64,000 bases of DNA from Octopus sinensis. Taxonomy: Eukaryota. The stretch is taken from positions 34,360,464-34,424,463 of the forward strand of contig NC_043011.1 of NCBI RefSeq assembly GCF_006345805.1. The letters run 5' to 3'. Shown here one piece after another: positions 1,646 to 61,589 of the stretch (positions within the stretch are counted from its first letter, which is position 1; every line of letters begins with the position of its first letter). A program made the translations under genes and the position numbers. The notes under the pieces were generated by a model. That model was not told where the DNA came from. It searched no databases and saw only the letters and a list, made by a program, of their open reading frames with translations.

Positions 1646-2855
1646 CATAGATACGACAGATCTAAATAGACATTATGCATTCAAATTATTTATTAATTAT
1701 TATAATATGAAAATCTAATATTTTGTAGACACGCCCTTTGTACTTTTACGATGCAAGGATCCCGTGAGGCATGCTCCTGATCAGATAACGAATATTCTCT
1801 TGAGGAATTTCTTGCCAAGTTTCATGCAGTAATCTCAAAAGATCTGGCTTTGGGGATGCTTTCTTGTTCTTTTGCGAAGTGTCTTGTCCATTATGCCCCA
1901 GAGATGTTTAAATAGAATTTATATCTGGCTACTGTCTTGGCCGTGGAAACTTTTTAACGTCATTCTCTTCCAACCAATCTAAAGTCTTTTTAACCGGGTG
2001 ACAAAGAGCTCCATCTTTCATAAATAGAGTCCTCTTTAATCATTTCACCACTGGAAAAGATTAGAAGGAGTGAGTCCTTTCTGCAATATGGACACATTTA
2101 TCTGAGTTTATGTTTCCCTCACACTCCACTAGCTCTGATCGACCATTGCTCCAAATTGCTCCCCAGACCATCACGGAATAGCCTCCGTGTTTCATTGTTG
2201 GCTGCAATCTATTTAGGTCAAATTCTTGATCACAGAGTCTCCAGACTGACACTCGACCACTGTCAGAAAATACAGCAAAATTGGGCTCATCAGAGAATAT
2301 GACAATGTTCATAAATGGTGGTGGCCTCCCCACCATCTCACTGGTCCAATCGTTTCTCCGCTTGATATTGGCTGGTCGAAAAAGTGGATTTCTTCTTGCT
2401 GCTCTGCCATAGTAGCTACGTTTGTGGAGATAACTGACAGTTGTTCTGGGACTGACATCAACTTGTTCTGCTATGTCAGAGTCCTTGCAACGAGGATTAT
2501 CCACCATACTTCTCTTAACGAAGGGAGGGGTCCTGTCAGAGGGCTCTGGGCGAGGTGATATGGACTCCTTCCCCATCACTGGTGAATTGCACAATCACTC
2601 TATTAGCTGTAGAAAGCGGGATCCCAAGGTTTTCTGCGACTTTACACTAAGTTCGCCTTCAGATTGACCCACAATATGGCCTCTTTGAAATTCAGACAGT
2701 ACCAAGGCTTCTTTTGAACATGACATAATTAAACAGTCACATATAAAACCTGAAACATAAAAATGTCAATTAATAAAAAATAGAAACCATTTCAAGTTAG
2801 AATAATCATAAAACGATGTTTTGTGGGGTGTCTATTTACTTCTGTCATGTCTGTG
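1646..2855 (-). mobile_element. Decayed full-length Tc1-like transposon (about 1.2 kb)
   Basis: ORF 2061-2594 has Tc1 motifs ([25 protein letters not shown]). A broken 'SPDLNPIEHLW'-like segment lies near 1900-1930. The 27-bp TIRs match 22/27 (CATAGATACGACAGATCTAAATAGACA vs CACAGACATGACAGAAGTAAATAGACA), with TA at 1644-45 and 2856-57. Confidence 0.9.
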
Positions 2856-7478: not shown

Positions 7479-7645
7479 TAGGCGTAGGAGTGCCTGTGTG
7501 GTAAGTAACTTGCTTACGATCCACACGGTTCCGGGTTCAGTCCCACTGCGTGGCACCTTGGGCAAGTGTCTTCTACTATAGCCTCGGGCCGACCAAAGCC
7601 TTGTGAGGGGATTTGGTAGACGGAAACTGAAAGAAATCCGTCGTA

Positions 7646-7969: not shown

Positions 7970-8020
7970 CTTGCTAATCCAAATCCATGTTCAAATTAAA
8001 GCGGATCGATTTTCTATACT

Positions 8021-8157
8021 TTAATAAGATCAGTTATTTGAAACTTTTCGGAAAATAAACGATAAGGAAGCGCGTACAACTTGTCTTTAAAGCCAGCAGA
8101 AAAGAACAATGTACGTTTCGGTCAAATGAAACTTCTTCAACGAACTATACCCTGCCC
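8021..8157 (-). repeat. Interspersed repeat (Penelope-like fragment) with a degenerate hammerhead core; inverted near-identical copy at 11913-12049
   Basis: The reverse complement matches 11913-12049 with about 5 mismatches and contains TTGAAGAAG..TCATTTGACCGAAACGTA. Confidence 0.65.
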
Positions 8158-8879
8158 AGTTGGCAAGGCTACATTCCTCTCAATCATACTGGCAACCTCG
8201 CCAACCAGTTTGTAGGAGGGAGGAGAGGCCCGCAAAGGTCATAACTACGGCACTGTCGTGTCGTATGACTAACGTACAGTATGAGAAAGGTTATTGTTGT
8301 GTTCATATATTGTTATAGTGATCACATCAAAGAGATACTTCCATGCAGACAATGTTTTTTTTTCTCCCCGAGGGCTATTGGCTGCGACCTTCAGTTCATA
8401 AGCTATCCTGAACTGATTAATCGAAATTATTACAAGTGTGTCTGTCTGCGTGCGCACGCACATTCACATACAAACATACACACACAAACACAAAGGCGCA
8501 CACACACGCACGCACGCACACACATACTCACGAACACGCATCCACTATGCGTGCTGACTTACATATACAAAAAATGCCATCCACACTTCTTCATACGCAA
8601 ATGCACACACACACACACACACGAATGCATACAGGCGCATGGGCACAAGCACATATTTTCATACAGTACCATCCATCCATACACACACACACAAACACAC
8701 AAATACATCCCAAACCATCCCACCACACTAACATCTCTCTGCATTAATCACTGTCTGAATTTGCCCTTTCTGCTTGTTTAGTTGCTGTTATAATAATCCT
8801 CATTAATAATATTTCCATTATTTCATATATTCCTCATTAATATCGATTCTATTACTTCTCTCACTTGTCGTGCGCACAC

Positions 8880-11862: not shown

Positions 11863-11912
11863 ATGTATGTATGTATGTATGTATGTATGTATGTATGTAT
11901 GTATGTATGTAT
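11755..11912. repeat. Compound (TATC)n(TGTC)n(TATG)n tetranucleotide array
   Basis: Direct reading of the sequence. Confidence 0.95.
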
Positions 11913-12048
11913 GGACAGGGTATAGTTCGTTGAAGAAGTCTCATTTGACCGAAACGTGCACTGTTCTTTTCTGCTGGCTTCAAAGACAAGTTGTACGCGC
12001 TTCCTTATCGTTTATTTTCCGAAAAGTTTCAAATAACTGATCTTATTA

Positions 12049-13315
12049 AAGGGTGCATAAAATATCTGAGGACAGGTTTATATTTATAAACAACAGATAA
12101 TAATTTATTTATCCAAAAATGCTACTACGAGGATAAAAATTAACCTTCTTGTCTATAATGTTATTCAATAAAGCCACTCTCAGCTTCATCATCTGCTTCT
12201 ATATGAGAACTAAATGATGTACATGCTCGAATCAAATGGTCCTGGTTCATTTTGGACATGACTCTGACTATGGCAGCTTTCATAGAATCTTTGGTGTTAT
12301 GGGCGTGTTCATTGACCTCTCTCTTAACAACGCTCCACATGTAATAGTCCAATGGATTGAGATCTGGGGAATTAGAAGGCCGAATGTCAGGGGTTATGTT
12401 ATCATAAAAAATTTCAGTCATCCATTCCTGTGTTTCTAGAGCCATATGTGATGGTGCAGAGTCTTACTGAAACACATATGGCCTTCCATTGCATACACTG
12501 TCTCTCCAGGGCTTAACAATTATTTCCAGGACCTCAATATAGGCGGCAGAGTCAACTCTAAGGCCTTGTGGAAAGAAGTAAGGAGGCATCACACGTCCTT
12601 CATTGCTGACAACCACTAAAACCATGACAGCTGCAGGAAATTTTGTATGCAGGAACTTCAGAAGGGTCTGCACATAACCATGTGTCATTTCTTCTGTTAA
12701 CTTTTTGATCGTGGTTTAAGTTTTTCGCGTTTGAGAAAAACCAAATCAAATCTTCTTCTGCTGGAGTTTTCAGTTTGTTTAAGAGCCTTTTAAATCTGAT
12801 GTAGTGATTTTCTTTTGCTTTTTCTGACAAATTGACCTTTCCTCATCACATAAGACTTATATCTGATATCTTCGTGGACGACATTTCTGACTGTTCCTTC
12901 TGACTCATGGAGATCTTCTGCAGTTGACCTCATGGATTTTCTGGGATTGTAACCAGTGGTCTGTTAAACTTGCTGAATAGATTCAAGTCTTCTGATGATT
13001 TCAGGGCATTTAGAAGGCTTTTTATGCTTTGATACTGGTGATACAATTCCATCTTCAGTCTCTAACTCCTTAATCCTCGTATATTCTATCTTCCTTACAA
13101 ACTTCGTAGACGAAAGATCTGGCAACTTTTAAAAATCGAGATATTTCTAAATCGCTATGCTCAGCCTTTATAACTACAATAACAGCATGCCTCTTCATTT
13201 GTCGAGTAAGATGAGGGTCTGCCATTATTTTCTTAAGAAGCGATTATACCGAGTTAGCAAAAAAAAGCAGCAATGACCCAAAGAAGGTATCGGCTCAAAT
13301 ACCTTACGCACCCTA
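12049..13315 (-). mobile_element. Decayed Tc1/mariner-superfamily transposon, DD37D (maT)-like
   Basis: Frameshifted transposase pieces: LIWFFSNAKNLNHDQKVNRRND, KFPAAVMVLVVVSNEGRVMPPYFF and PSNSPDLNPLDYYMWSVV. Imperfect TIRs AGGGTGCATAAAATATCTGAG vs AGGGTGCGTAAGGTATTTGAG, with TA at 12047-48 and 13316-17. Confidence 0.85.
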
Positions 13316-18330: not shown

Positions 18331-18731
18331 TACTCTTTTACTCTTTTATCCATTTACTTGTTTCAGTCATTTGACTGCGGCCATGCTGGAGCACCGTCTT
18401 TAGTCGAGCAAATCGACCCCAGGCTTATTCTTTATAAGCCTAGTACTTATTCTGTCGGTTTTCTTTTGCCGAACCGCTAAGTCACGGGGCCGTAAACAGA
18501 CCAGCATCGGTTGTCAAGCGATGTTGGAGGGACAAACACAGACAAACATGCACACATACACACACACACATATACGACGGGCTTCTTTCAGTTTCCGTCT
18601 ACCATATCCACTCACAAGGCTTTAGTCGGCCCGAGGCTATAGTAGAAGACACTTGCCTAAGGTGCCACGCAGCGAGAATGAACCCGGAACCATGCGGCCG
18701 GTAAGCAAGCTACTTACCACACAGCCACTCC
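18331..18731 (-). mobile_element. SINE family B
   Basis: Co-linear with 398-819. Confidence 0.9.
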
Positions 18732-18873: not shown

Positions 18874-19287
18874 GGATCCTTTCGGTTTGAACGGCAGTTT
18901 TTACTAGCGGTGTCATATGAAATTGTCACCCATAGTTATGACCCTAGTATCGATCTATTGCATTTCAATCTCTTTTAGGGTTAGGGGTGGGGGTAGGGTA
19001 TCTTTTTTTCTTCACAAAATGTAAATAAACCCAATCTGTTTCTTAAACGAGGGACATATTCATACGGCACAGAATGTTTTTTTTACCTCAATAGACGTCA
19101 GTGATTGGTTGAAATTGCAGAAATTGAAGAAAAAACAACAACAAATGCCTTACAAACTATAGAATGTTCTCAATAAAGCCAAGAAAAAAAGATGTTTTAC
19201 AAACACATTCTACCAGTATACGAAGTTTCAACTTTTTTAGTTACCTAGAAATTATGTTAAAAACTGCCGTTCAAACCGAAAAGATCC
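18874..19287. mobile_element. GG-terminal MITE, 28-bp TIR, 8-bp TSD (copy 1; Merlin-like)
   Basis: TIR GGATC(C/T)TTTCGGTTTGAACGGCAGTTTT. Flanks are GGGGAAGT and GGGGATGT. Confidence 0.9.
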
Positions 19288-20578: not shown

Positions 20579-20997
20579 GGATCTTTTCGGTTTGACCGGC
20601 AGGTTTTAAAAATAATTTCCACGTAACTAAACACTTTTAAACTTCGTTTACTGGTAGAATGTGTTTATAAAACATCTTTTTCTCTTGGCTTTATTGAGAA
20701 AATTCTATAGTTTGTAAGATATTTGTTGTTGTTTTTTCTTCAATTTCTGCAATTTCAACCAATCACTGACGTCTATTGAAATGAAAACATTCTGTGCCGT
20801 ATGAATATGTCCCTCGTTTAAGAAACAGATTGGGTTTATTTACATTTCTGAAGAAAAAAAGATACCCTTCCCCCCCACCCCTAACCCTAACTCTAAAACA
20901 GATTGAAATGCAATAGATCGACACTAGGGTCATAATTATGGGTGACTATTTCATATGACACCGCTAGAAAAAACTGCCGGTCAAACCGAAAAGATCC
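20579..20997. mobile_element. GG-terminal MITE (copy 2, opposite orientation to copy 1)
   Basis: Same TIRs. Perfect 8-bp TSD GAAAATGG at 20571-78 and 20998-21005. Confidence 0.92.
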
Positions 20998-35641: not shown

Positions 35642-36228
35642 CACAAATGTCGTATAAAATTTACGGCAGCTGTTTCGATAGAATTACATTTATTTAATAA
35701 ATCATATTAAATGTAGTATCAAGAACCGTCAGGTAAAATTTTAAACAGGTAAGATTTTAAACACTGACTTGGCCACAGCTAACATTAGCTGGACTAATGA
35801 CTCATTTAAGTTTTATATTGCAATATACAAAATAATTAGGTGTGGCTTAAAACAGGCAAATAAGAAACAGAGAGATCGTATAGATATATAAGTTGAATTC
35901 ACTTATCTAGATTATTGTGTTGTTTAGCAATGACGCCGAATAATTTAAGAATCAACTGAGATAGCGTGGCCTTGACTTCTAATTAAAAAGTCATTAAAAG
36001 TGAAATTAGAATGAATATTTGCATGATCTCTTTGTTTCTTATTTGCCTGTTTTAAGTCACACCCAATTCTATATATTCGAATGTAAAATTTAATCATAAG
36101 TCTGAGTCGATGTTTAAAATCTTACTTTATGTTGGTAAATTATATATTATGAAGTAATATTTTATTACTGCATTAAAAAAATAAAATTCTACCGAAACAG
36201 CTGTCGGAAATTTTAAACGTCATTTGTG
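35642..36228. mobile_element. Long-TIR fold-back element (arms about 240-260 bp)
   Basis: The outer arm CACAAATGTCGTATAAAATTTTACGGCAGCTGTTTCGATAGAATT and the inner arm GGTGTGGCTTAAAACAGGCAAATAAGAAAC both recur in reverse complement. Confidence 0.85.
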
Positions 36229-37649: not shown

Positions 37650-38987
37650 GAACATCCAATACTGAATTCCACCTTCAATCCAATATGTAATTCATCTGAT
37701 TCCGTCGATGATTTGAGAGCTGAAATCTTTTCGAATCTTCTTCTTAATTACAATAATACAGATTGGATCCGTGAGCGAGCTATCCTGTTGCTGTAAATAA
37801 ACTGAATAAACCTTCGGGAGAAGTATTCACTTATAACACAATTGACAGTCTTATTGATGATCAGTATAATGTTAACTGTGGAGGCGCAATGGCCCAGTGG
37901 TTAGGGCAGCGGACTCGCGGTCGTAGGATCGCGGTTTCGATTCCCAGACCGGGCGTTGTGAGTGTTTATTGAGCGAAAACACCTAAGAGCTCCACGAGGC
38001 TCCGGTAGGGGATGGTGATCCCTGCTGTACTCTTTCACCACAACTTTCTCTCACTCTTTCTTCTGTTGGCCTGCTCGCTTAGCCAGCGGGGTGGCGTCAT
38101 TCGAAGGCTAAAACAATGCGAATGCATTGTGACCAGCGATGTGTAACACCATCTGATGGTCTGGTCGGTCACGTGATCACGTGATAATGTTAACTACACC
38201 ATAATTTACTAGAACCACCAGGTACAGCTCCTCATTGTCTTCAGCTGAAAAAATGGACTCCTATTATGTTATTGCGTAATTTGTCTCAACCAAAATTATG
38301 CAATGGTACAAGACAAATTGTGCATAAATTTATGGGGAACTGCATTGAGGCAAATATTCTCACTGGTTGTGGTAAAGGTGAGACTGTCTTCATTCCTCGC
38401 ATACCAGTTATACCATCGAATGTCCCATTCCAATTTAAGCGGTTACAGTTTCCTATACAAATTACTTTTGCTATGATCATTAATAAAATTCAGGGCCAAA
38501 CACTAACAGTTGCTGGATTGCAGCTTGAAAAACTACGCTTTTCACATGGCTAACTTTAAGTAGGAGCACCACGTGTGGGAGTAAAAGCAAATCTCTTTGC
38601 TTATGCACCCCAAAATAAAACAAAAAAACATTGCTTACAAAGAAATATTGACTCTTAATGCAACACGAATTGTTCAATAACTTAATTTGCCATTACTATG
38701 ATTACATTCAAGAATGAGTAAATTACATATTTAAATGAAGTGAATTATATAATTGCCATTAGTGTATTGATAAATAAAATATCACATACAACTCACTTAT
38801 TATTGTCATGTAATAAACAAACAGAAGTTCGTGTATGTACCCGATCTTTTTTCTACTTCAATTATTATGTTTTTCTCTTCTAAAATATACAGATACAGGA
38901 GGAATAAATTATATATACAATACTTTGAATGTAGCTCCAAGAAAGAGTAAAAGTAATTACCCGATCAACGACGGGTATTACTGCTAT
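37650..38987 (+). mobile_element. Helitron relic: PIF1-like helicase C-terminus and 3' end
   Basis: Segments [51 protein letters not shown] and [29 protein letters not shown] terminal hairpin ACCCGATCAACGACGGGT followed by ACTGCTA lies at ~38959-38986. Confidence 0.88.
37878..38183 (+). mobile_element. SINE head A with tail 3, inserted in the Helitron helicase, 12-bp TSD
   Basis: ATAATGTTAACT at 37866-77 and 38184-95. The tail ends GTCACGTGATCACGTG. Confidence 0.9.
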
Positions 38988-39170
38988 GGCTGTGTAGTAA
39001 GTAGTTTGCTTACAAACCACATGGTTCCGGGTTCAGTCCCACTGCGTGGCACCTTGGGCAAGTGTCTTCTACTATAGCCTCGAGCCGACCAAAGCCTTGT
39101 GAGTGGATTTGGTAGACGGAAACTGAAAGAAGCCCGTCGTATGTATGTATATATACATATATATATATAT

Positions 39171-39375
39171 TATTATTGAATGGAAGAAATGGAGTTGAAC
39201 GAAGATTGTACAGAATTCCTTTTATTACATTCTACACATGTTTCAAAGGCCACAAATTTCCAAATTCAGATTAAATCTGAATTTGGAAATTTGTGGCCTT
39301 TGAAACATGTGTAGAATGTAATAAAAGGAATTCTGTACAATCTTCGTTCAACTCCATTTCTTCCATTCAATAATA
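39171..39375. repeat. Perfect palindrome with 102-bp arms and a 1-nt loop
   Basis: 39171-39272 is the exact reverse complement of 39274-39375. Confidence 0.97.
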
Positions 39376-39599
39376 TATTAAACTTCAATTATCCGCACCA
39401 ACGCACGGTTGCAACACCAAATGGTCTTATCTCCAACCGTGTATTTTCTGCTGTGATTTTTGCTACCCAGGTATCGGTTAAACTTTTGAATAATCTGTAA
39501 CAAGAAAATTCATCTTTCTATTTCAACAAACACACATATATATATATATATTATATATATATATATTTGTGTGTGTATATACATACATACATACATACA

Positions 39600-41719: not shown

Positions 41720-42109
41720 GGATCTTTTCGGTTTGAACGGCAGTTTTTTAACATAATTTCTAGGTAACTAAAAAATTTTAAACTTCGTATACTGGTAGAA
41801 TGTGTTTATAAAACATCTTTTTCTCTTGGCTTTATTGAGAAAATTCTATAGTTTGTAAGATATTTGTTGTTTTTTTTTCTTCCATTTCTGCAATTTCAAC
41901 CAATCACTGACGTCCATTGAGGTAAAAACATTCTGTGCCGTATGAATATGTCCCTCGTTTAAGAAACAGATTGGGTTTATTCACATTTGTGAAGAAAAAA
42001 AGATCCCCTAACCCTAACCCTAAAACAGATTGAAATGCAATAGATCGATATGGGTGACAATTTCATATGACACCGCTAGAAAAAACTGCCGTTCAAACCG
42101 GAAAGATCC
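41720..42109. mobile_element. GG-terminal MITE (copy 3)
   Basis: Same TIRs and interior as copies 1 and 2. Flanks are GTGCTTGG and GTGCTTTG. Confidence 0.9.
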
Positions 42110-43514: not shown

Positions 43515-44012
43515 CTTTTCTACTCTAGGCACAAGGCCCGAAATTTTGTCGATTAGATCGACCTCAGTACGCAACTGGTACTTAATTTATCGCCGGAATT
43601 TGGACCCAGAACATTAAGACAGACGAAATACCTATTTCTTTACTGCCTACAAGGGGCTAAACACAGAGAGGACAAACGGATTAAATCGATTATATCGACC
43701 CCAGTGCGTAACTGATACTTATTTAATCGACCCCGAAAGGATGAAAGGCAAAGTCAACCTCGGCGGAATTTGAACTCAGAACGTAGCGGCAGACGAAATA
43801 CCTATTTCTTTACTACCCACAAGGGGCTACACACAGAGAGGACAAACAATGACAGACAAACGGATTAAGTCTATTATATCGACCTCAGTGCGTAACTGGT
43901 ACTTATTTAATCAAAGTCGACCTCGGCGGAATTTGAACTCAGAACGTAACGGCAGACGAAATACGGCTACGCATTTCGCCCGGCGTGCTAACGATTCTGC
44001 CAGCTCGCCGCC
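43515..44012 (-). mobile_element. Family C SINE trimer (one head, three bodies)
   Basis: The junction CAGACGAAATACCTATTTCTTTAC occurs twice. The single head CGCCCGGCGTGCTAACGATTCTGCCAGCTCGCCGCC sits at the right end. A candidate TSD, AGTATAAAATATT, lies at 43502-14 and 45041-53. Confidence 0.85.
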
Positions 44013-48640: not shown

Positions 48641-48691
<51 letters not shown>

Positions 48692-48855
48692 GACGGGCTT
48701 CTTTCAGTTTCCGTCTACCAAATTCACTAACAAGGCTTTGGTCGGCCTGAGGCTATAGTAATAGACACTTGCCCAAGGTGCCACGCAGTGGGACTGAACC
48801 CGGAACCATGTGGTTCGTAAGCAAGCTACTTACCACACAGCCTCTCCTACGCCTA
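48404..48855 (-). mobile_element. SINE family B, full length
   Basis: Co-linear with 398-819. Confidence 0.9.
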
Positions 48856-51240: not shown

Positions 51241-52265
51241 AAGGCGGCGAGCTGGCAGAAACGTTAGCACGCCGGGCGAAATGCGTAGCCGTATTTCGTC
51301 TGCCCTTACGTTCTGAGTTCAAATTCCGCCGAGGTAGACTTTGCCTTTCATCCTTTCGGGGTCGATTAAATAAGTACCAGTTACGCACTGGGGTCGATGT
51401 AATCGACTTAATCCGTTCGTCTGTCCTTGTTTGTCTTCTCTGTGTTTAGCCCCTTGTGGATAGTAAAGAAATAAGTATTTCGTCTGCCGCTACGTTCTGA
51501 GTTCAAATTCTGCCGAGGTTGACTTTGCCTTTCATCCTTTCGGGGTCGATTAAATAAGTACCAGTTACGCACTGGGGTCGATGTAATCGACTTAATCCGT
51601 TTGTCTGTCCTTGTTTGTCTTCTCTGTGTTTAGCTCCTTGTGGATAGTAAAGAAATAGGTATTTCGTCTGCCGCTACGTTCTGAGTTCAAATTCCGCCGA
51701 GGTGGACTTTGTCTTCATCCTTTCGGGGTCGATTAAATAAGTACCAGTTACGCACTGGGGTCGATGTAATCGACTTAATCCGTTTGTCTGTCCTTGTTTG
51801 TCTTCTCTGTGTTTAGCTCCTTGTGGATAGTAAAGAAATAGGTATTTCGTCTGCCGCTACGTTCTGAGTTCAAATTCCGCCGAGGTGGACTTTGTCTTTC
51901 ATCCTTTCGGGGTCGATTAAATAAGTACCAGTTACGCACTGGGGTCGATATAATCGACTTAATCCGTTTGTCTTCTTTGTGTTTAGCCCCTTGTGGATAG
52001 TAAAGAAATAAGCATTTCGTCTGCCGCTACGTTCTGAGTTCAAATTCCGCCGAGGTTGACTTTGCCTTTCATCCTTTCGGGGTCGATTAAATAAGTACTA
52101 GTAACGCACTGGGGTCGATATAATCGACTTAATCCGTTTGTCTTTCCTTGTTTGTCCCCTCTCTGTGTAGCCCCTTGTGGGCAGTAAAGAAATAGGTATT
52201 TCGTCTACCGTTACGTTCTGAGTTCAAATTCCGCCGAGGTTGACTTTATCTTTCGACCTTTCGGG
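51241..52265 (+). repeat. Family C SINE tandem array: one head, five ~184-bp bodies and a partial sixth
   Basis: Units start at about 51292, 51476, 51660, 51843, 52013 and 52197, joined by AAAGAAATA(G/A)G(T/C)ATTTCGTCT. Confidence 0.95.
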
Positions 52266-52925
52266 GACAAGATAAAAAAATTGTGGGGAGAGGATTAATC
52301 ATTTATATCGGCTCCCTTACTCTGCGAGCATAAAATGTAAATATGACCACAGAGCATGGGTGAAGCTGTTGAAGACATGGACGTACTGCACTATTGCCAG
52401 AAATCATGTGTTTAAGGGCCAAAGCCTTAATTTATGTATGTTGTAATTTACTTACAATAAATTAATCTAAGGTCCTGAGTGCATTGCTTTACCCAGGGAC
52501 CCATAAGACTGTTAACGCAACCCTGTACGTGGTATACTTTACTTTGTCAAAAAACATGGCTATATGCGCATGCGTGAACTTACTTCCTGTTTGCATAAAG
52601 AATTCTATTTCCAAAAATATAAAATATGAAGTAAATAGAAATAATCGTTGGTAAGACACAAAAATGTATCTTTTATTTCAGTCGTTAGACTGCGGACACG
52701 CCGGGGCACTGCTTAGGAAAGGCTAGTCGAATAAATCGATTCCAGTACTTATTCTATCGGTGTCTTTGCCGAAATGCTAAGTTACAGGGATGTAAACAAA
52801 CATCGGTTGTGGGTGAACAAATACTCCCCTAACACACACACACACACACACACAGTGCACACACCACTCGTTTTTTTCTTCTCTCTCCGTTTTCTTTCTC
52901 TCCATCTGTTTATCCTCCTCATTCC

Positions 52926-56521: not shown

Positions 56522-56860
56522 ATTTATAAACTATTTACAAGTTCAAATATGCTTGAGGCATATTCGGACCCGCAAGAAAGCCATTCACTGTATTTTTACC
56601 ACGCAGAAAATTTCTCGCTGTAGACAAATAGGTGTAAACTCACCAAGTATCTGATACTGAGGAGGAGTTAACAACTCCGAAACGCATGCATCCATCAGTT
56701 TGGATAGAGGTGGGCGCTTCGAAATGACTCGGTGTGTATACACCTATTTGTCTACAGCGAGAAATTTTCTCCATGATAAACACACCATGAATGGCTGTTT
56801 TATGCGTTCGAATATGCCTCTTGCACATTTTAACTAGTAATAAGTTTATGTCTGTACACA
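56522..56860. mobile_element. Fold-back with ~120-bp arms and a hammerhead motif in the spacer (Penelope-like)
   Basis: The arm AGAAAATTTCTCGCTGTAGACAAATAGGTGTA recurs in reverse complement. The spacer contains a hammerhead core. Confidence 0.75.
56651..56698 (+). ncRNA. Type I hammerhead ribozyme motif with two stem mismatches
   Basis: CTGATA-CTGAGGA-GGAG-TTAACAA-CTCC-GAAAC-GCATGC-ATC-CATCAG. Confidence 0.7.
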
Positions 56861-57329: not shown

Positions 57330-57930
57330 TTCAGTAACCATCTCCGTCAGGTTCGAATGTGGGCTACAAGGCCAGCTCTTGATCTGCAGCAAAGATAACA
57401 TCTACTGTAGGTGAAGCTACTTGAAGCAACGTAAAGGGGATGCTTCTCATATGCTCTTTCGTATTCGCTCGGTTGTTTCTCCTCAATAAGTGGAATTACG
57501 GGCGTCAGCGGTCAGTGTCATTCATCACGTCTCAGGGTCTTTTCCTCCCAAGTGTCTGGGGAGATGACGGAGTTCTTCATACAGCATATCTTTGTATCGG
57601 AACCTTTGGCCACCACAGGTCCGCCTACCCTGACACTATTCACTGTAGAAAACTACCTTTGAGGGCCTGTGTCTCTCCATTACGCAAATATATTCCACCC
57701 AGCGCAGCTGCGATGAGTTTATGAGGACCTCCACACTAACTGCGCCAACGTGGAGCAAGACCTCCGCATCAGGAGTGATATCTTGCCATCTGATATGCAA
57801 GATGGAGCGCAGATGACGAAGTTGGACTTGCATCAGGTTCTTGAGATGCTTACGGTAGAGGGCCATGCATTCCGTGGCGTAGAGAAAGTCAGGGAACACT
57901 GCGGCACTGTACACGTTTTTCTTCGTGTCA
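57330..57930 (-). mobile_element. RTE-clade LINE ORF C-terminal relic
   Basis: LYATECMALYRKHLK..QLRHLRSILHIRWQD..EVL...SQLRW...FYSE, then RYKD and a terminal CRSRAGLVAHIR. Confidence 0.85.
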
Positions 57931-58431
57931 TGACAGCTCCACAGACGCTTCTCTCGAGAGCCAAAAACCTTTAATCTCTTTTACACACACACACACACAC
58001 AAATATATGCATATATACACACACATACACTGATGCACACAATATGTCGCTCCCTTGTGGCTAATGCCATTAGAAATACTGTGAACCAGTGATTTCCAAC
58101 TCCGCCGTCTTTCACAAAATGCATGATATTCATTATTAACGAGACCAGTTTTCCCAAGTAAAGGATATCGATAATCGGCTCGATAGTAATGTATTAGAAG
58201 CATATATTTTATTGATTCTGGAGGGAATTAAAAGATAAAAATATACGAAGTTTAAATCTATCAAGATTTAGTAGTCATGTTGCATGTACTGAACTCTGAT
58301 AACTGTTGATTCGCTTGTTCATTAATTAGACTGATGCCCAGCTACTGAATTTAGTAATCATTGAGTGCTCTGGGTGTAACTTCGGTATAGGTACCAGAAA
58401 TACCGGATACATTTCAAGAAAGTGTTTCTTG

Positions 58432-59513
58432 AACTTAATAGCACCACTTGGAAAATACATTTAATGATGTTTATATTACAGTACAGACAGTCTTCGAGCA
58501 CTATGACCCATTCGAGTAAAGAGATATTACTCACAAAGATATATCCGGATGTAGGTGGTTTATCTGAAATTTGTTGGAGATATTCGTCCATAAATCGTTT
58601 GGACCTATTTCTCCTCTTATGAGTCTTAGCATGATGTTAAAGAAAGCAGGGCCAGCTGAGGTGAAATAGTTCCGTCTTAGTGTTGTGATGTGATGCAAGC
58701 ATGATTTTTGTAAAGAACTGATGTCACGGGGACCAACCGTTGGGTGAATTTTGAAGTTGATACCAACATTATTTGAGCAATGTTGATGGATTATTTTATG
58801 ACGATGAAACACCAAATAGAAAACAAAAAACGAACCAATTTATCAGAGCACCGGCGATCCTTCGGTATAGGTACCGTAAGTGGCTTTGCTTACATTTCTG
58901 AAGATAACAGAAACCCTTTTCTCCCTAACCCTAACACAAACCCTAACCCCCCATATATATAAAAAAAACAAGTGTTGTTTTTTTTATATATATGGGGGTT
59001 AGGGTTTGTGTTAGGGTTAGGGAGAAAAGGGTTTCTGTTATCTTCAGAAATGTAAGCAAAGCCACTTACGGTACCTATACCGAAGGATCGCCGGTGCTCT
59101 GATAAATTGGTTCGTTTTTTGTTTTCTATTTGGTGTTTCATCGTCATAAAATAATCCATCAACATTGCTCAAATAATGTTGGTATCAACTTCAAAATTCA
59201 CCCAACGGTTGGTCCCCGTGACATCAGTTCTTTACAAAAATCATGCTTGCATCACATCACAACACTAAGACGGAACTATTTCACCTCAGCTGGCCCTGCT
59301 TTCTTTAACATCATGCTAAGACTCATAAGAGGAGAAATAGGTCCAAACGATTTATGGACGAATATCTCCAACAAATTTCAGATAAACCACCTACATCCGG
59401 ATATATCTTTGTGAGTAATATCTCTTTACTCGAATGGGTCATAGTGCTCGAAGACTGTCTGTACTGTAATATAAACATCATTAAATGTATTTTCCAAGTG
59501 GTGCTATTAAGTT
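58432..59513. repeat. 1082-bp near-perfect palindrome (540/539-bp arms, GTG loop)
   Basis: The arms are exact reverse complements except for C6 vs G5 near the apex. Identical 94-aa ORFs occur at 58531-58815(-) and 59130-59414(+). Confidence 0.97.
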
Positions 59514-59560
59514 AGTCATAGCCTGGACCAGTTCTGGCTGAAACTTATCTTAGTATCTAA
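59110..59560 (+). mobile_element. 3' fragment of a CR1/Jockey-group non-LTR retrotransposon (mirrored at 58432-58835)
   Basis: ITTLRRNYFTSAGPAFFNI and (M)DEYLQQISDKPPTSGY..SLLEW resemble the ORF2 C-terminal 'GPRLFN..LDxxLxxxPDxP..GY..NSL' pattern. The sequence continues past the arm to a TATCTTAGTATCTAA end. Confidence 0.65.
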
Positions 59561-61336: not shown

Positions 61337-61568
61337 AAGGTGGCGAGCTGGCAGAAACGTTAGCACGCCGGGCGAAATGCGTAGCCGTATTTCGTCTGCC
61401 GTTACGTTCTGAGTTCAAATTCCGCCGAGGTCGACTTTGTCTTTCATCCTTTCGGGGTCGATAAATTAAGTACCAGTTACGCACTGGGGTCGATATAATC
61501 GACTTAATCCGTTTGTTTGTCCTTGTTTGTCCCCTCTGTGTTTAGCCCCTTGTGGGTAGTAAAGAAAT
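61337..61568 (+). mobile_element. Family C SINE monomer with a perfect 18-bp TSD
   Basis: ATATAGGTTTTAAATGAA at 61319-36 and 61569-86. The element ends GTAAAGAAAT. Confidence 0.95.
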
Positions 61569-61589
61569 ATATAGGTTTTAAATGAAGTC

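What the first reader, a model, noticed from the sequence alone, without database searches (positions are those of the whole stretch)
58380..59560. 1.08-kb near-perfect palindrome containing a LINE fragment, with telomere-like repeats at the apex and a second AA-GTG-TT hairpin at its outer junction
Seen: arms 58432-58971 and 58975-59513 differ only by one base in a C/G homopolymer, and the loop is GTG. CCCTAACCCTAACACAAACCCTAACCC lies about 25 bp from the apex. The left outer junction is itself a 9-bp hairpin with the same loop (TTCAAGAAA-GTG-TTTCTTGAA, 58413-58433). A 16-bp direct repeat, CTTCGGTATAGGTACC, lies at 58380 and 58860. The LINE sequence continues beyond the right arm but is cut off at the left arm. 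Inference: this is a recent fold-back duplication made after the LINE inserted, not a TIR transposon. The shared AAGTGTT motif at both turning points suggests sequence-specific hairpin formation or opening. A long-read fold-back chimera is a real alternative, because the only difference between the arms is homopolymer length.
Basis: partly seen in the sequence, partly recalled or inferred. Interest (0 to 1): 0.72.

Follow-up and report, generated by a model that had tools for sequence, protein, structure and literature searches.

The report
Snap-back inverted duplication forming a palindrome
A 550-bp stretch was copied backwards next to itself, apparently when a broken or nicked DNA end folded onto itself and primed synthesis; this is a known kind of repair scar, unusually long, with a smaller twin in the same window, and raw reads are still needed to show it is not an artefact.

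Summary
The palindrome is in the sequence as described: arms 58432-58971 and 58975-59513, a GTG loop, and one C6/G5 difference. The 9-bp GTG-looped hairpin at the left junction, the telomere-like module and the 16-mer are also there. The "LINE" label is not supported. The arms are non-coding, and the only LINE-like coding remnant lies outside them (57350-57914, minus strand).

Both GTG turn-arounds derive from one ancestral AAGTGTT. If 58427-58976 is deleted and each 3' end is allowed to snap back (AA-GTG-TT, 3-nt loop; 7 nt made on the left, 537 nt on the right) and rejoin on AA/TT, the assembly is reproduced exactly except for one homopolymer C.

A second perfect palindrome (39171-39375) has the same architecture: a 6-bp flanking repeat (ATTAAA), a 100-nt snap-back tract and one filler base.

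Best reading: a real, very young templated inverted insertion made by intramolecular snap-back synthesis during break or nick repair (SD-MMEJ-like). The AAGTGTT motif is a duplicated break site and not a recognition signal. The telomere-like repeat is a dispersed module that happened to be copied.

A classic read-level foldback chimera fits poorly, but other library or assembly artefacts cannot be excluded without reads. Interest is moderate.

The parts
58420..58426 (+). AAGTGTT, left copy of the 7-bp direct repeat that flanks the insertion. This is the inferred ancestral break site, and it contains the AA-GTG-TT mini-hairpin used as snap-back primer.
   Evidence: period-550 direct repeat 58420-58426 = 58970-58976. 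The null probability of a run of 7 or more is about 0.027.
58413..58433 (+). Junction hairpin TTCAAGAAA-GTG-TTTCTTGAA. Its right half (58427-58433, TCTTGAA) is the 7-nt snap-back tract made on the left 3' end.
   Evidence: one of 3 such hairpins in 64 kb; reproduced by simulation; folds as a separate hairpin abutting the large one.
58432..58971 (+). Left arm: the inserted inverted copy, templated on the right arm. AA at 58432-58433 is the 2-nt microhomology where the two extended ends rejoined.
58972..58974 (.). Apex loop GTG, the minimal 3-nt hairpin loop. Together with the flanking AA/TT it forms the right copy of AAGTGTT (58970-58976).
58975..59513 (+). Right arm: the original sequence, continuous with the unique right flank. 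It served as template for the 537-nt snap-back tract.
   Evidence: The opposite polarity has only a 4-nt repeat (AAGT), needs a filler base and leaves the junction hairpin unexplained.
58947..58952 (+). C6 homopolymer. Its mirror, G5, is at 58994-58998. This is the only difference between the arms.
58923..58949 (+). Telomere-like module CCCTAACCCTAACACAAACCCTAACCC, mirrored at 58994-59022. It was copied as a passenger and belongs to a dispersed repeat module.
   Evidence: 10 matches in the window against 0.04 expected; about 90 bp at 72% similarity to copies at 18974(-), 20879(+) and 42006(+).
58380..58395 (+). 16-mer CTTCGGTATAGGTACC in the left flank, identical to 58860-58875 and reverse-complementary to 59070-59085. 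In the reconstructed ancestor it forms a 16-bp inverted repeat with a 124-nt spacer around the break site. Its origin is unexplained.
39171..39375 (.). Second perfect palindrome, P2: arms 39171-39272 and 39274-39375 with centre A at 39273. The right arm is the inserted copy. The 6-bp direct repeat ATTAAA lies at 39270-39275 and 39377-39382, and there is a filler T at 39376.
   Evidence: the simulation is identical to the assembly with one filler T.
57350..57914 (-). LINE ORF2 C-terminal remnant, 5'-truncated and frameshifted. It is a neighbour of the palindrome and not part of it.
   Evidence: translation; four distant homologues at about 50% identity. There is no Pfam domain. The LINE assignment rests on my recognition of the conserved post-RT motif.

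Best explanation
The palindrome is a real, very young, templated inverted insertion.

Inferred ancestor: ...CATTTCAAGAAAGTGTT|GTTTTTTTTATATATATGGGGG..., that is, window 58426 joined directly to 58977.

Inferred steps:
1. A break, staggered or processed so that both 3' ends carried the 7 nt AAGTGTT/AACACTT, or an equivalent nick, exposed 3' ends.
2. Each end folded on itself through the 2-nt primer repeat AA...TT across a minimal 3-nt loop.
3. The left end was extended by 7 nt (TCTTGAA). The right end was extended by 537 nt, copying its own strand.
4. The two new ends annealed on AA/TT and were filled in and ligated.

The result is a 550-bp insertion (58427-58976) flanked by a 7-bp direct repeat, a 540-bp palindrome with a GTG loop, and a 9-bp hairpin with the same loop at the outer junction.

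Shown: the sequence derivation is exact.
Inferred: that it happened in vivo, that it started from a two-ended break rather than three serial switches of one nascent strand, and which polymerase did it.

It works like snap-back SD-MMEJ (Pol theta-type alternative end joining), but with a far longer synthesis tract.
For: -: both the serial-switch and the two-ended snap-back simulations reproduce 4 kb of assembly exactly, except one C in a homopolymer.
- a 7-bp direct repeat flanks the insertion, and the alternative polarity is worse.
- the junction hairpin is one of only 3 in 64 kb and shares the loop. AAGTGTT is not enriched, so the shared motif reflects duplication and not specificity.
- All turn-arounds have exactly a 3-nt loop closed by a 1-2-nt primer pair, as expected for intramolecular priming.
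- an independent second palindrome in the window has the same architecture.
- (PMC5728401): SD-MMEJ snap-back uses inverted primer repeats, mostly 1-4 nt and less than 10 nt apart. The two ends act independently and are joined at newly made microhomology.
- (PMC5453318): simple fork template switches never show the return point upstream of the departure point. Both events here do, which favours two 3' ends sharing an overlap.
- (PMC12870357): read-level foldback artefacts have a different geometry.
Against: - No reads, second assembly or orthologue could be examined. Every route to independent sequence failed. One search found no exact match to the 35-nt SINE core either, so the metagenome negative carries little weight.
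- Snap-back tracts of 537 and 100 nt are far longer than the under-15-bp insertions typical of SD-MMEJ.
- The window has no excess of small perfect hairpins, so these are not the tail of many small events.
- Only perfect palindromes are seen, with nothing at 94-99% identity. That also fits an artefact.
- Perfect long palindromes with 1-3-nt spacers are expected to be unstable in vivo.
- The flanking repeats alone are only modestly significant (P about 0.03 and 0.07).
Confidence: 0.5

Rival explanations
1. Technical artefact. The inverted insertion is absent from the animal's genome. It arose in vitro (polymerase snap-back or template switching during damage repair, amplification or library preparation) or during assembly or gap filling from a single aberrant read, and was then polished to near-identity by reads from the true arm.
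For: - The only difference between the arms is a homopolymer length.
- Two perfect palindromes occur in 64 kb, with none at intermediate identity.
- There is no excess of small hairpins.
- Foldback artefacts exist in about 0.6% of ONT gDNA reads, and palindromic chimeras are frequent after whole-genome amplification (PMC12870357, PMC6218980).
- Long perfect palindromes are expected to be unstable in vivo.
Against: - Known foldback reads are symmetric about the read midpoint. Here the copy ends after 540 or 102 nt and rejoins unique flank 6-7 nt from the departure point, and the contig then continues for 58 kb.
- Two precise junctions plus a duplicated overlap need a two-ended or switch-and-return event, which is unlikely for free molecules in vitro.
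- A consensus assembly should out-vote a single aberrant read.
- The left arm is of consensus quality (539 of 540 bases).
Confidence: 0.28
2. Real, but made at a replication fork. One nascent strand underwent three serial template switches (FoSTeS/MMBIR-like, or an extended four-point template-switch mutation) on AA/TT microhomologies, without a two-ended break.
For: -: the three-switch simulation gives the same product.
- template switching is documented to create perfect inverted repeats de novo.
- In the ancestor, a 16-bp inverted repeat with a 124-nt spacer brackets the site and could stall a fork.
Against: - In both palindromes the return point lies 6-7 nt upstream of the departure point. 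That class was never observed among human template-switch events, because it requires reopening the new duplex.
- P1 needs two rounds of switching.
- All loops are exactly 3 nt, which is a constraint of intramolecular folding and is not required for inter-strand switching.
Confidence: 0.15
3. Retroelement machinery. A LINE endonuclease made TPRT-type staggered nicks, giving 3' overhangs and a variable-length target-site duplication. The reverse transcriptase then extended the snapped-back DNA end, or copied an antisense transcript of the locus, instead of a LINE RNA.
For: - The geometry of two 3' ends sharing 6-7 nt equals that of TPRT target-site duplications (inference).
- The duplication length is variable, 7 and 6 bp.
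- There is one filler base at the P2 junction.
- The inserted copy ends in an A-rich tract next to the duplication.
- LINE and SINE copies are abundant nearby.
Against: - No retroelement sequence is inserted.
- The four inferred nick sites share no consensus.
- An RNA template would need its 3' end exactly at the nick, which snap-back explains for free.
- No direct evidence was obtained.
Confidence: 0.04
4. A foldback or TIR transposon, or a sequence-specific hairpin-forming or hairpin-opening nuclease acting at AAGTGTT.
For: - The same 7-mer is found at both turning points.
- P2 could formally be read as a TA-flanked MITE.
Against: - The window holds no other copy of either arm.
- No target-site duplication flanks the whole of P1.
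- The insert is a copy of the adjacent unique DNA.
- AAGTGTT is not enriched, and P2 uses a different sequence, ATTAAA.
- Transesterification hairpins give even palindromes without a loop, whereas both palindromes have odd centres.
Confidence: 0.03

Closest known systems
Snap-back synthesis-dependent MMEJ / polymerase-theta-mediated end joining templated insertions (PMC2943611, PMC5728401, PMC4912351)
   Same: A 3' end folds on a 1-2-nt inverted primer repeat a few nt upstream and copies its own strand. The two ends act independently and are rejoined at newly synthesised microhomology (AA/TT). The insert becomes part of a longer inverted repeat.
   Different: Reported insertions are mostly under 15 bp and synthesis is non-processive. 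Here one tract is 537 nt (100 nt in P2). Both ends carry a 6-7-nt overlap that ends up as a direct repeat. Polymerase dependence is unknown.
Four-point template-switch mutations (Loytynoja and Goldman 2017, PMC5453318; hairpin and miRNA birth, PMC8794818, PMC10710096)
   Same: A switch-and-return event copies a nearby fragment in reverse complement and creates a perfect inverted repeat de novo.
   Different: Those events are tens of bp long, mostly inter-strand, and never have point 4 upstream of point 1. Here the tracts are 100-537 nt with 3-nt loops, point 4 lies 6-7 nt upstream of point 1, and P1 needs two rounds.
Fold-back inverted duplications and palindromic amplification (PMC3907307) and ODIRA (PMC10766183)
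   Same: An inverted duplication is seeded by intrastrand pairing at short inverted repeats, with a short spacer at the apex.
   Different: Those events are chromosome-scale or replicon-scale, often with terminal deletion or hairpin-capped intermediates. This one is a local 550-bp insertion with both flanks intact.
Long-read foldback or whole-genome-amplification palindromic chimeras (PMC12870357, PMC6218980)
   Same: Sequence is followed by its own reverse complement with little or nothing in between.
   Different: The artefacts fold near the read midpoint and run to the read end. Here the copy is short, has a second precise junction, and is embedded in a long contig.
Foldback transposons and MITEs
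   Same: Long, near-perfect inverted arms with a tiny spacer.
   Different: No other copies were found, no target-site duplication surrounds P1, and the arms are a copy of the adjacent unique DNA.

Membership tests
Snap-back SD-MMEJ / TMEJ templated insertion | The inserted DNA is the reverse complement of sequence immediately flanking the break | tested here: met
   P1; P2.
Snap-back SD-MMEJ / TMEJ templated insertion | Short inverted primer repeats (1-4 nt, less than 10 nt apart) at the 3' end can form the priming hairpin | tested here: met
   P1 uses AA-GTG-TT and AA-CAC-TT. P2 uses T-TAA-A. The simulation asserts Watson-Crick pairing of each primer.
Snap-back SD-MMEJ / TMEJ templated insertion | Rejoining occurs at microhomology created by the new synthesis | tested here: inconclusive
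   P1 has a 2-nt AA/TT overlap. P2 has no microhomology and one filler T.
Snap-back SD-MMEJ / TMEJ templated insertion | Limited, non-processive synthesis (insertions mostly under 15 bp) | tested here: not met
   The 7-nt tract fits, but the 537-nt (P1) and 100-nt (P2) tracts do not.
Snap-back SD-MMEJ / TMEJ templated insertion | Dependence on polymerase theta or other alt-EJ factors | not testable with these tools
   This needs genetics or biochemistry.
Four-point template-switch mutation | A single switch-and-return with the 2->3 fragment copied in reverse complement from nearby | tested here: inconclusive
   P2 fits one round. P1 needs a 7-nt round plus a 537-nt round.
Four-point template-switch mutation | The return point (4) is not upstream of the departure point (1), as in all observed classes | tested here: not met
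   The flanking direct repeats of 7 and 6 bp mean point 4 precedes point 1.
Long-read foldback artefact | The fold lies near the read midpoint, with arms running to the molecule ends | tested here: not met
   The arms are 540 and 102 nt and then join unique flank. This was tested on the assembly only, not on reads.
Long-read foldback artefact | No independent molecules support the junctions | not testable with these tools
   No reads were available. All look-ups for independent assemblies were empty.
Foldback / TIR transposon | Multiple dispersed copies | tested here: not met
   The 64-kb window holds no other copy of either arm. The rest of the genome was not searched.
Foldback / TIR transposon | A target-site duplication flanks the whole element | tested here: not met
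   P1 flanks are ...GTTTCTTG and AGTCATAG..., with no repeat. P2 is ambiguous, because TA lies within the palindrome.
   All frames contain stop codons. There are no Pfam hits and no homologues. No repeat library was available to test for a LINE 3' UTR.
Telomere fusion or interstitial telomere | G-rich strands point 5'->3' towards the fusion point, with tandem TTAGGG arrays | tested here: not met
   CCCTAA lies left of the apex and TTAGGG right of it, so the G-strands point away from the apex. There are only 3 interrupted units, and the module is dispersed.

The most novel reading that the evidence does not exclude
This genome has an active process, dependent on staggered nicks, that seeds long perfect palindromes (100-550 bp) by DNA-templated snap-back synthesis and leaves TSD-like 6-7-bp duplications. 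A LINE endonuclease/reverse transcriptase acting without an RNA template is one candidate. If frequent, it would be a steady source of long perfect hairpin RNAs, which could serve as ADAR substrates or as hpRNA/miRNA precursors, in a lineage noted for heavy RNA editing and miRNA expansion.
Probability: 0.08. Interest if true: 0.75.

Novelty: new member of a known kind. Interest (0 to 1): 0.4.

Why it matters
If real, the locus is an unusually clean natural record of snap-back repair. Every base of a 550-bp insertion, both turn-arounds and the rejoining point can be derived from one ancestral 7-mer.

The synthesis tract is 10-50 times longer than those seen in experimental SD-MMEJ. A second event with the same architecture 19 kb away hints that the process may be common in this genome.

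Long perfect palindromes are fragile sites, and when transcribed they form perfect double-stranded RNA. A frequent source of them would therefore bear on genome instability and on the birth of hairpin RNAs.

If it is an artefact, the architecture (short inverted copy, duplicated 6-7-mer, 3-nt loop) is a useful signature for flagging a class of assembly error that foldback filters based on read symmetry would miss.

Tried and rejected
1. Exact-product look-ups of three ORFs, including one spanning the apex, found nothing on record.
2. A protein search with all open segments of the arm, apex and junctions concatenated gave no hit.
3. A metagenome DNA scan for a 41-mer of the arm found nothing. 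A control scan for a 35-nt core of the abundant SINE also found no exact match, so that negative carries little weight.
4. Rfam found no family in the window.
5. Pfam on arm ORFs and on ORFs right of the palindrome found no RT/EN domain.
6. The idea that the left flank is a patchwork of several templated pieces was rejected. Apart from the 16-mer, short matches are at background level.
7. The idea that an older degenerate quasi-palindrome extends beyond the 16-mer was not significant.
8. A link between the palindrome boundaries and SINE/LINE target-site duplications was not convincing.
9. A general excess of small perfect hairpins is absent.
10. The opposite polarity (right arm of P1 as the copy) is a worse fit.
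11. The LINE-tail search returned only four unnamed distant hits, so the host organism was not identified.

Full report
**Observation**

The palindrome is real in the assembly.
- Arms 58432-58971 and 58975-59513 are reverse complements around a GTG loop. A global alignment shows a single difference, C6 (58947-58952) against G5 (58994-58998).
- As single-stranded DNA the region folds into two directly abutting hairpins, the small junction hairpin and the 540-bp one, with a minimum free energy of -680 kcal/mol.
- The telomere-like string lies at 58923-58949.
- The 9-bp hairpin TTCAAGAAA-GTG-TTTCTTGAA lies at 58413-58433.
- The 16-mer lies at 58380 and 58860, with an inverted copy at 59070.
- The junction hairpin is not a chance feature. 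Only three non-low-complexity perfect 9-bp/3-nt-loop hairpins exist in 64 kb (unfiltered shuffles give 0.4 of any kind), and this one sits on the junction and shares the loop.

**What the arms are**

The 'LINE fragment' label is not supported.
- All six frames of the arms are interrupted by stop codons.
- The arm ORFs and ten ORFs to the right of the palindrome have no significant Pfam match; the only one listed, DUF4798 at E=0.012 and 16 bits, is below its 27-bit cut-off.
- A 709-aa concatenation of every open segment found no homologue among 5.8 billion proteins.
- Rfam finds nothing in the window.
- The only LINE-like coding remnant, the conserved region downstream of the RT domain (recognised from my own knowledge), lies at about 57350-57914 on the minus strand. 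That is outside the palindrome. It has four distant unnamed homologues.
- The arm has no other copy in the window.
- About 90 bp carrying TTACATTTCTGAAGA...CCCTAACCCTAAC resembles, at 72%, a repeat family with copies at 18974(-), 20879(+) and 42006(+).
- CCCTAACCCTAA-type modules occur 10 times in the window against 0.04 expected. The telomere-like string is therefore a dispersed module that was copied as a passenger.
- Its G-rich strand points away from the apex, the opposite of a telomere-telomere fusion.

**Reconstruction**

- AAGTGTT occurs at 58420-58426 and again at 58970-58976. It is a 7-bp direct repeat with period 550, and it is not enriched in the window, 8 observed against 6.7 expected.
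- Deleting 58427-58976 gives a putative ancestor: ...CATTTCAAGAAAGTGTT|GTTTTTTTTATATATATGGGGG...
- From that ancestor two formally equivalent simulations regenerate the assembly:
  1. One nascent strand makes three switches.
  2. A break leaves two 3' ends that both carry the 7-mer.
- In the second model the left end ...AAGTGTT-3' folds (TT on AA, loop GTG) and is extended by 7 nt (TCTTGAA). The right end ...AACACTT-3' folds in the same way and is extended by 537 nt. The two new ends then pair on AA/TT.
- The product equals the 4-kb observed sequence except for one C in the homopolymer.
- Both GTG loops, the 9-bp junction hairpin and the arm boundary are therefore explained by a single site and 2-nt pairings.
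- The opposite polarity (right arm as the copy) has only a 4-nt flanking repeat, needs a filler base and leaves the junction hairpin unexplained.

**A second case**

- A scan of the whole window found another perfect palindrome, 39171-39272 / A / 39274-39375. It has no other copy in the window.
- It has the same architecture. The 6-bp direct repeat ATTAAA (39270-39275 and 39377-39382, period 107) overlaps the apex.
- A simulation reproduces the assembly exactly: snap-back from ...ATTAAA-3' (A on T, loop TAA), 100 nt of synthesis, then one filler T.
- Its copied tract ends where a SINE's (TA)n tail begins. I could not establish any link between target-site duplications and either palindrome.

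**Mechanism**

- Every turn-around has exactly a 3-nt loop closed by a 1-2-nt primer pair. That is the steric minimum for an intramolecular hairpin, and it is not required by inter-strand switching.
- Hairpins made by transesterification (hAT or RAG type) would give even palindromes with no loop, so 'hairpin opening' is unlikely.
- The features match the snap-back branch of synthesis-dependent MMEJ. That process uses inverted primer repeats, mostly 1-4 nt and less than 10 nt apart; the ends act independently and are joined at newly made microhomology (PMC5728401).
- In the four-point template-switch framework both events have the return point 6-7 nt upstream of the departure point. That class was never seen among human events, because it requires reopening the new duplex (PMC5453318). 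This favours two 3' ends that share an overlap, the geometry of a staggered break.
- Departures from the known process:
  - Tracts of 537 and 100 nt, against mostly under 15 bp experimentally.
  - No excess of small perfect hairpins in the window.

**Artefact rival**

- I could not reach reads or any independent assembly. The 35-nt core of the abundant SINE also has no exact match in the metagenome collection, so that negative carries little weight.
- Points in favour of an artefact:
  - The sole difference between the arms is a homopolymer length.
  - There are two perfect palindromes and none at 94-99% identity.
  - Such palindromes are expected to be unstable in vivo.
- Points against:
  - Documented foldback reads make up about 0.6% of ONT gDNA reads and are virtually absent from HiFi. 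They fold near the read midpoint (PMC12870357).
  - Here the copy is short, has a second precise junction, returns within 7 nt of its departure point, and is embedded in a contig that continues for 58 kb.
- Two locus-specific imperfect inverted repeats might be older events of the same kind: 56526-56648/56727-56849 (81% identity, 78-nt spacer) and 35834-35877/36025-36068 (93%, 147-nt spacer). This is weak evidence.
- My estimate is about 0.65-0.7 that the structure is real and about 0.28 that it is an artefact.

**Unexplained**

- The 16-mer at 58380 is significant. None of 400 control segments has a match of 16 nt or more.
- It is isolated. Other short matches of the left flank to the arm are at background level, and extended similarity is not significant.
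- In the reconstructed ancestor it forms a 16-bp inverted repeat with a 124-nt spacer around the break site. It may be the trace of an earlier short switch or a conserved repeat motif.

**Verdict**

This is a correctly observed structure with a partly wrong annotation: it is not LINE, and the AAGTGTT motif is not sequence-specific. It is best explained as a young snap-back templated inverted insertion. That is a known kind of repair scar, here unusually long, exactly reconstructible, and with a twin in the same window. Confirmation with reads is the decisive missing step.

Noticed in passing
window 39171-39375: A second perfect palindrome: 102-nt arms, a single central A, flanked by the 6-bp direct repeat ATTAAA (39270-39275 and 39377-39382) with one filler T at 39376. 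It has the same snap-back architecture as the finding. Its outer end abuts the (TA)n tail of a SINE.
   Followed up: yes
window 18874-19264 and 20603-20997; also 41745-42100: A repeat of about 390 bp carrying an internal CCCTAACCCTAAC module occurs as an inverted pair (91-92% identity) around about 1.3 kb, plus a solo copy (94%). It is possibly a TIR element. It shares a module of about 90 bp with the palindrome arm. CCCTAACCCTAA-type modules occur 10 times in the window against 0.04 expected.
   Followed up: partly
window 56526-56648 / 56727-56849, and 35834-35877 / 36025-36068: Locus-specific imperfect inverted repeats (81% identity with a 78-nt spacer; 93% with a 147-nt spacer) with no other copies in the window. 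They may be older, decayed local inverted duplications.
   Followed up: partly
window 38985-39140 and 10 other sites (e.g. 48690-48842, 7491-7644, 654-807, 18574-18727): A tRNA-derived SINE with a TA/TATG microsatellite tail has 11 copies in the window at 78-94% identity.
   Followed up: partly
window 51241-52266: A tandem array with a period of about 184 bp, made of a unit that also occurs at 61337-61569 and 43672-44009 (88-95% identity). It looks like a satellite derived from a dispersed repeat.
   Followed up: no
window 8019-8158 / 11912-12051: A 140-nt inverted repeat at 96% identity separated by 3.75 kb, with no other copies in the window. It could be the terminal inverted repeats of a DNA transposon.
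   Followed up: no
window 58994-59022 (mirror 58923-58952): GGGGGTTAGGGTTTGTGTTAGGGTTAGGG has four G-runs and could form a G-quadruplex about 20 nt from the inferred break site. Its position relative to the break does not obviously fit a fork blocked at the G4.
   Followed up: no
window 2061-2594 (-): A 177-aa ORF resembling a Tc1/mariner transposase fragment, judged by eye and not tested. The window is otherwise dominated by microsatellites and low-complexity ORFs.
   Followed up: no
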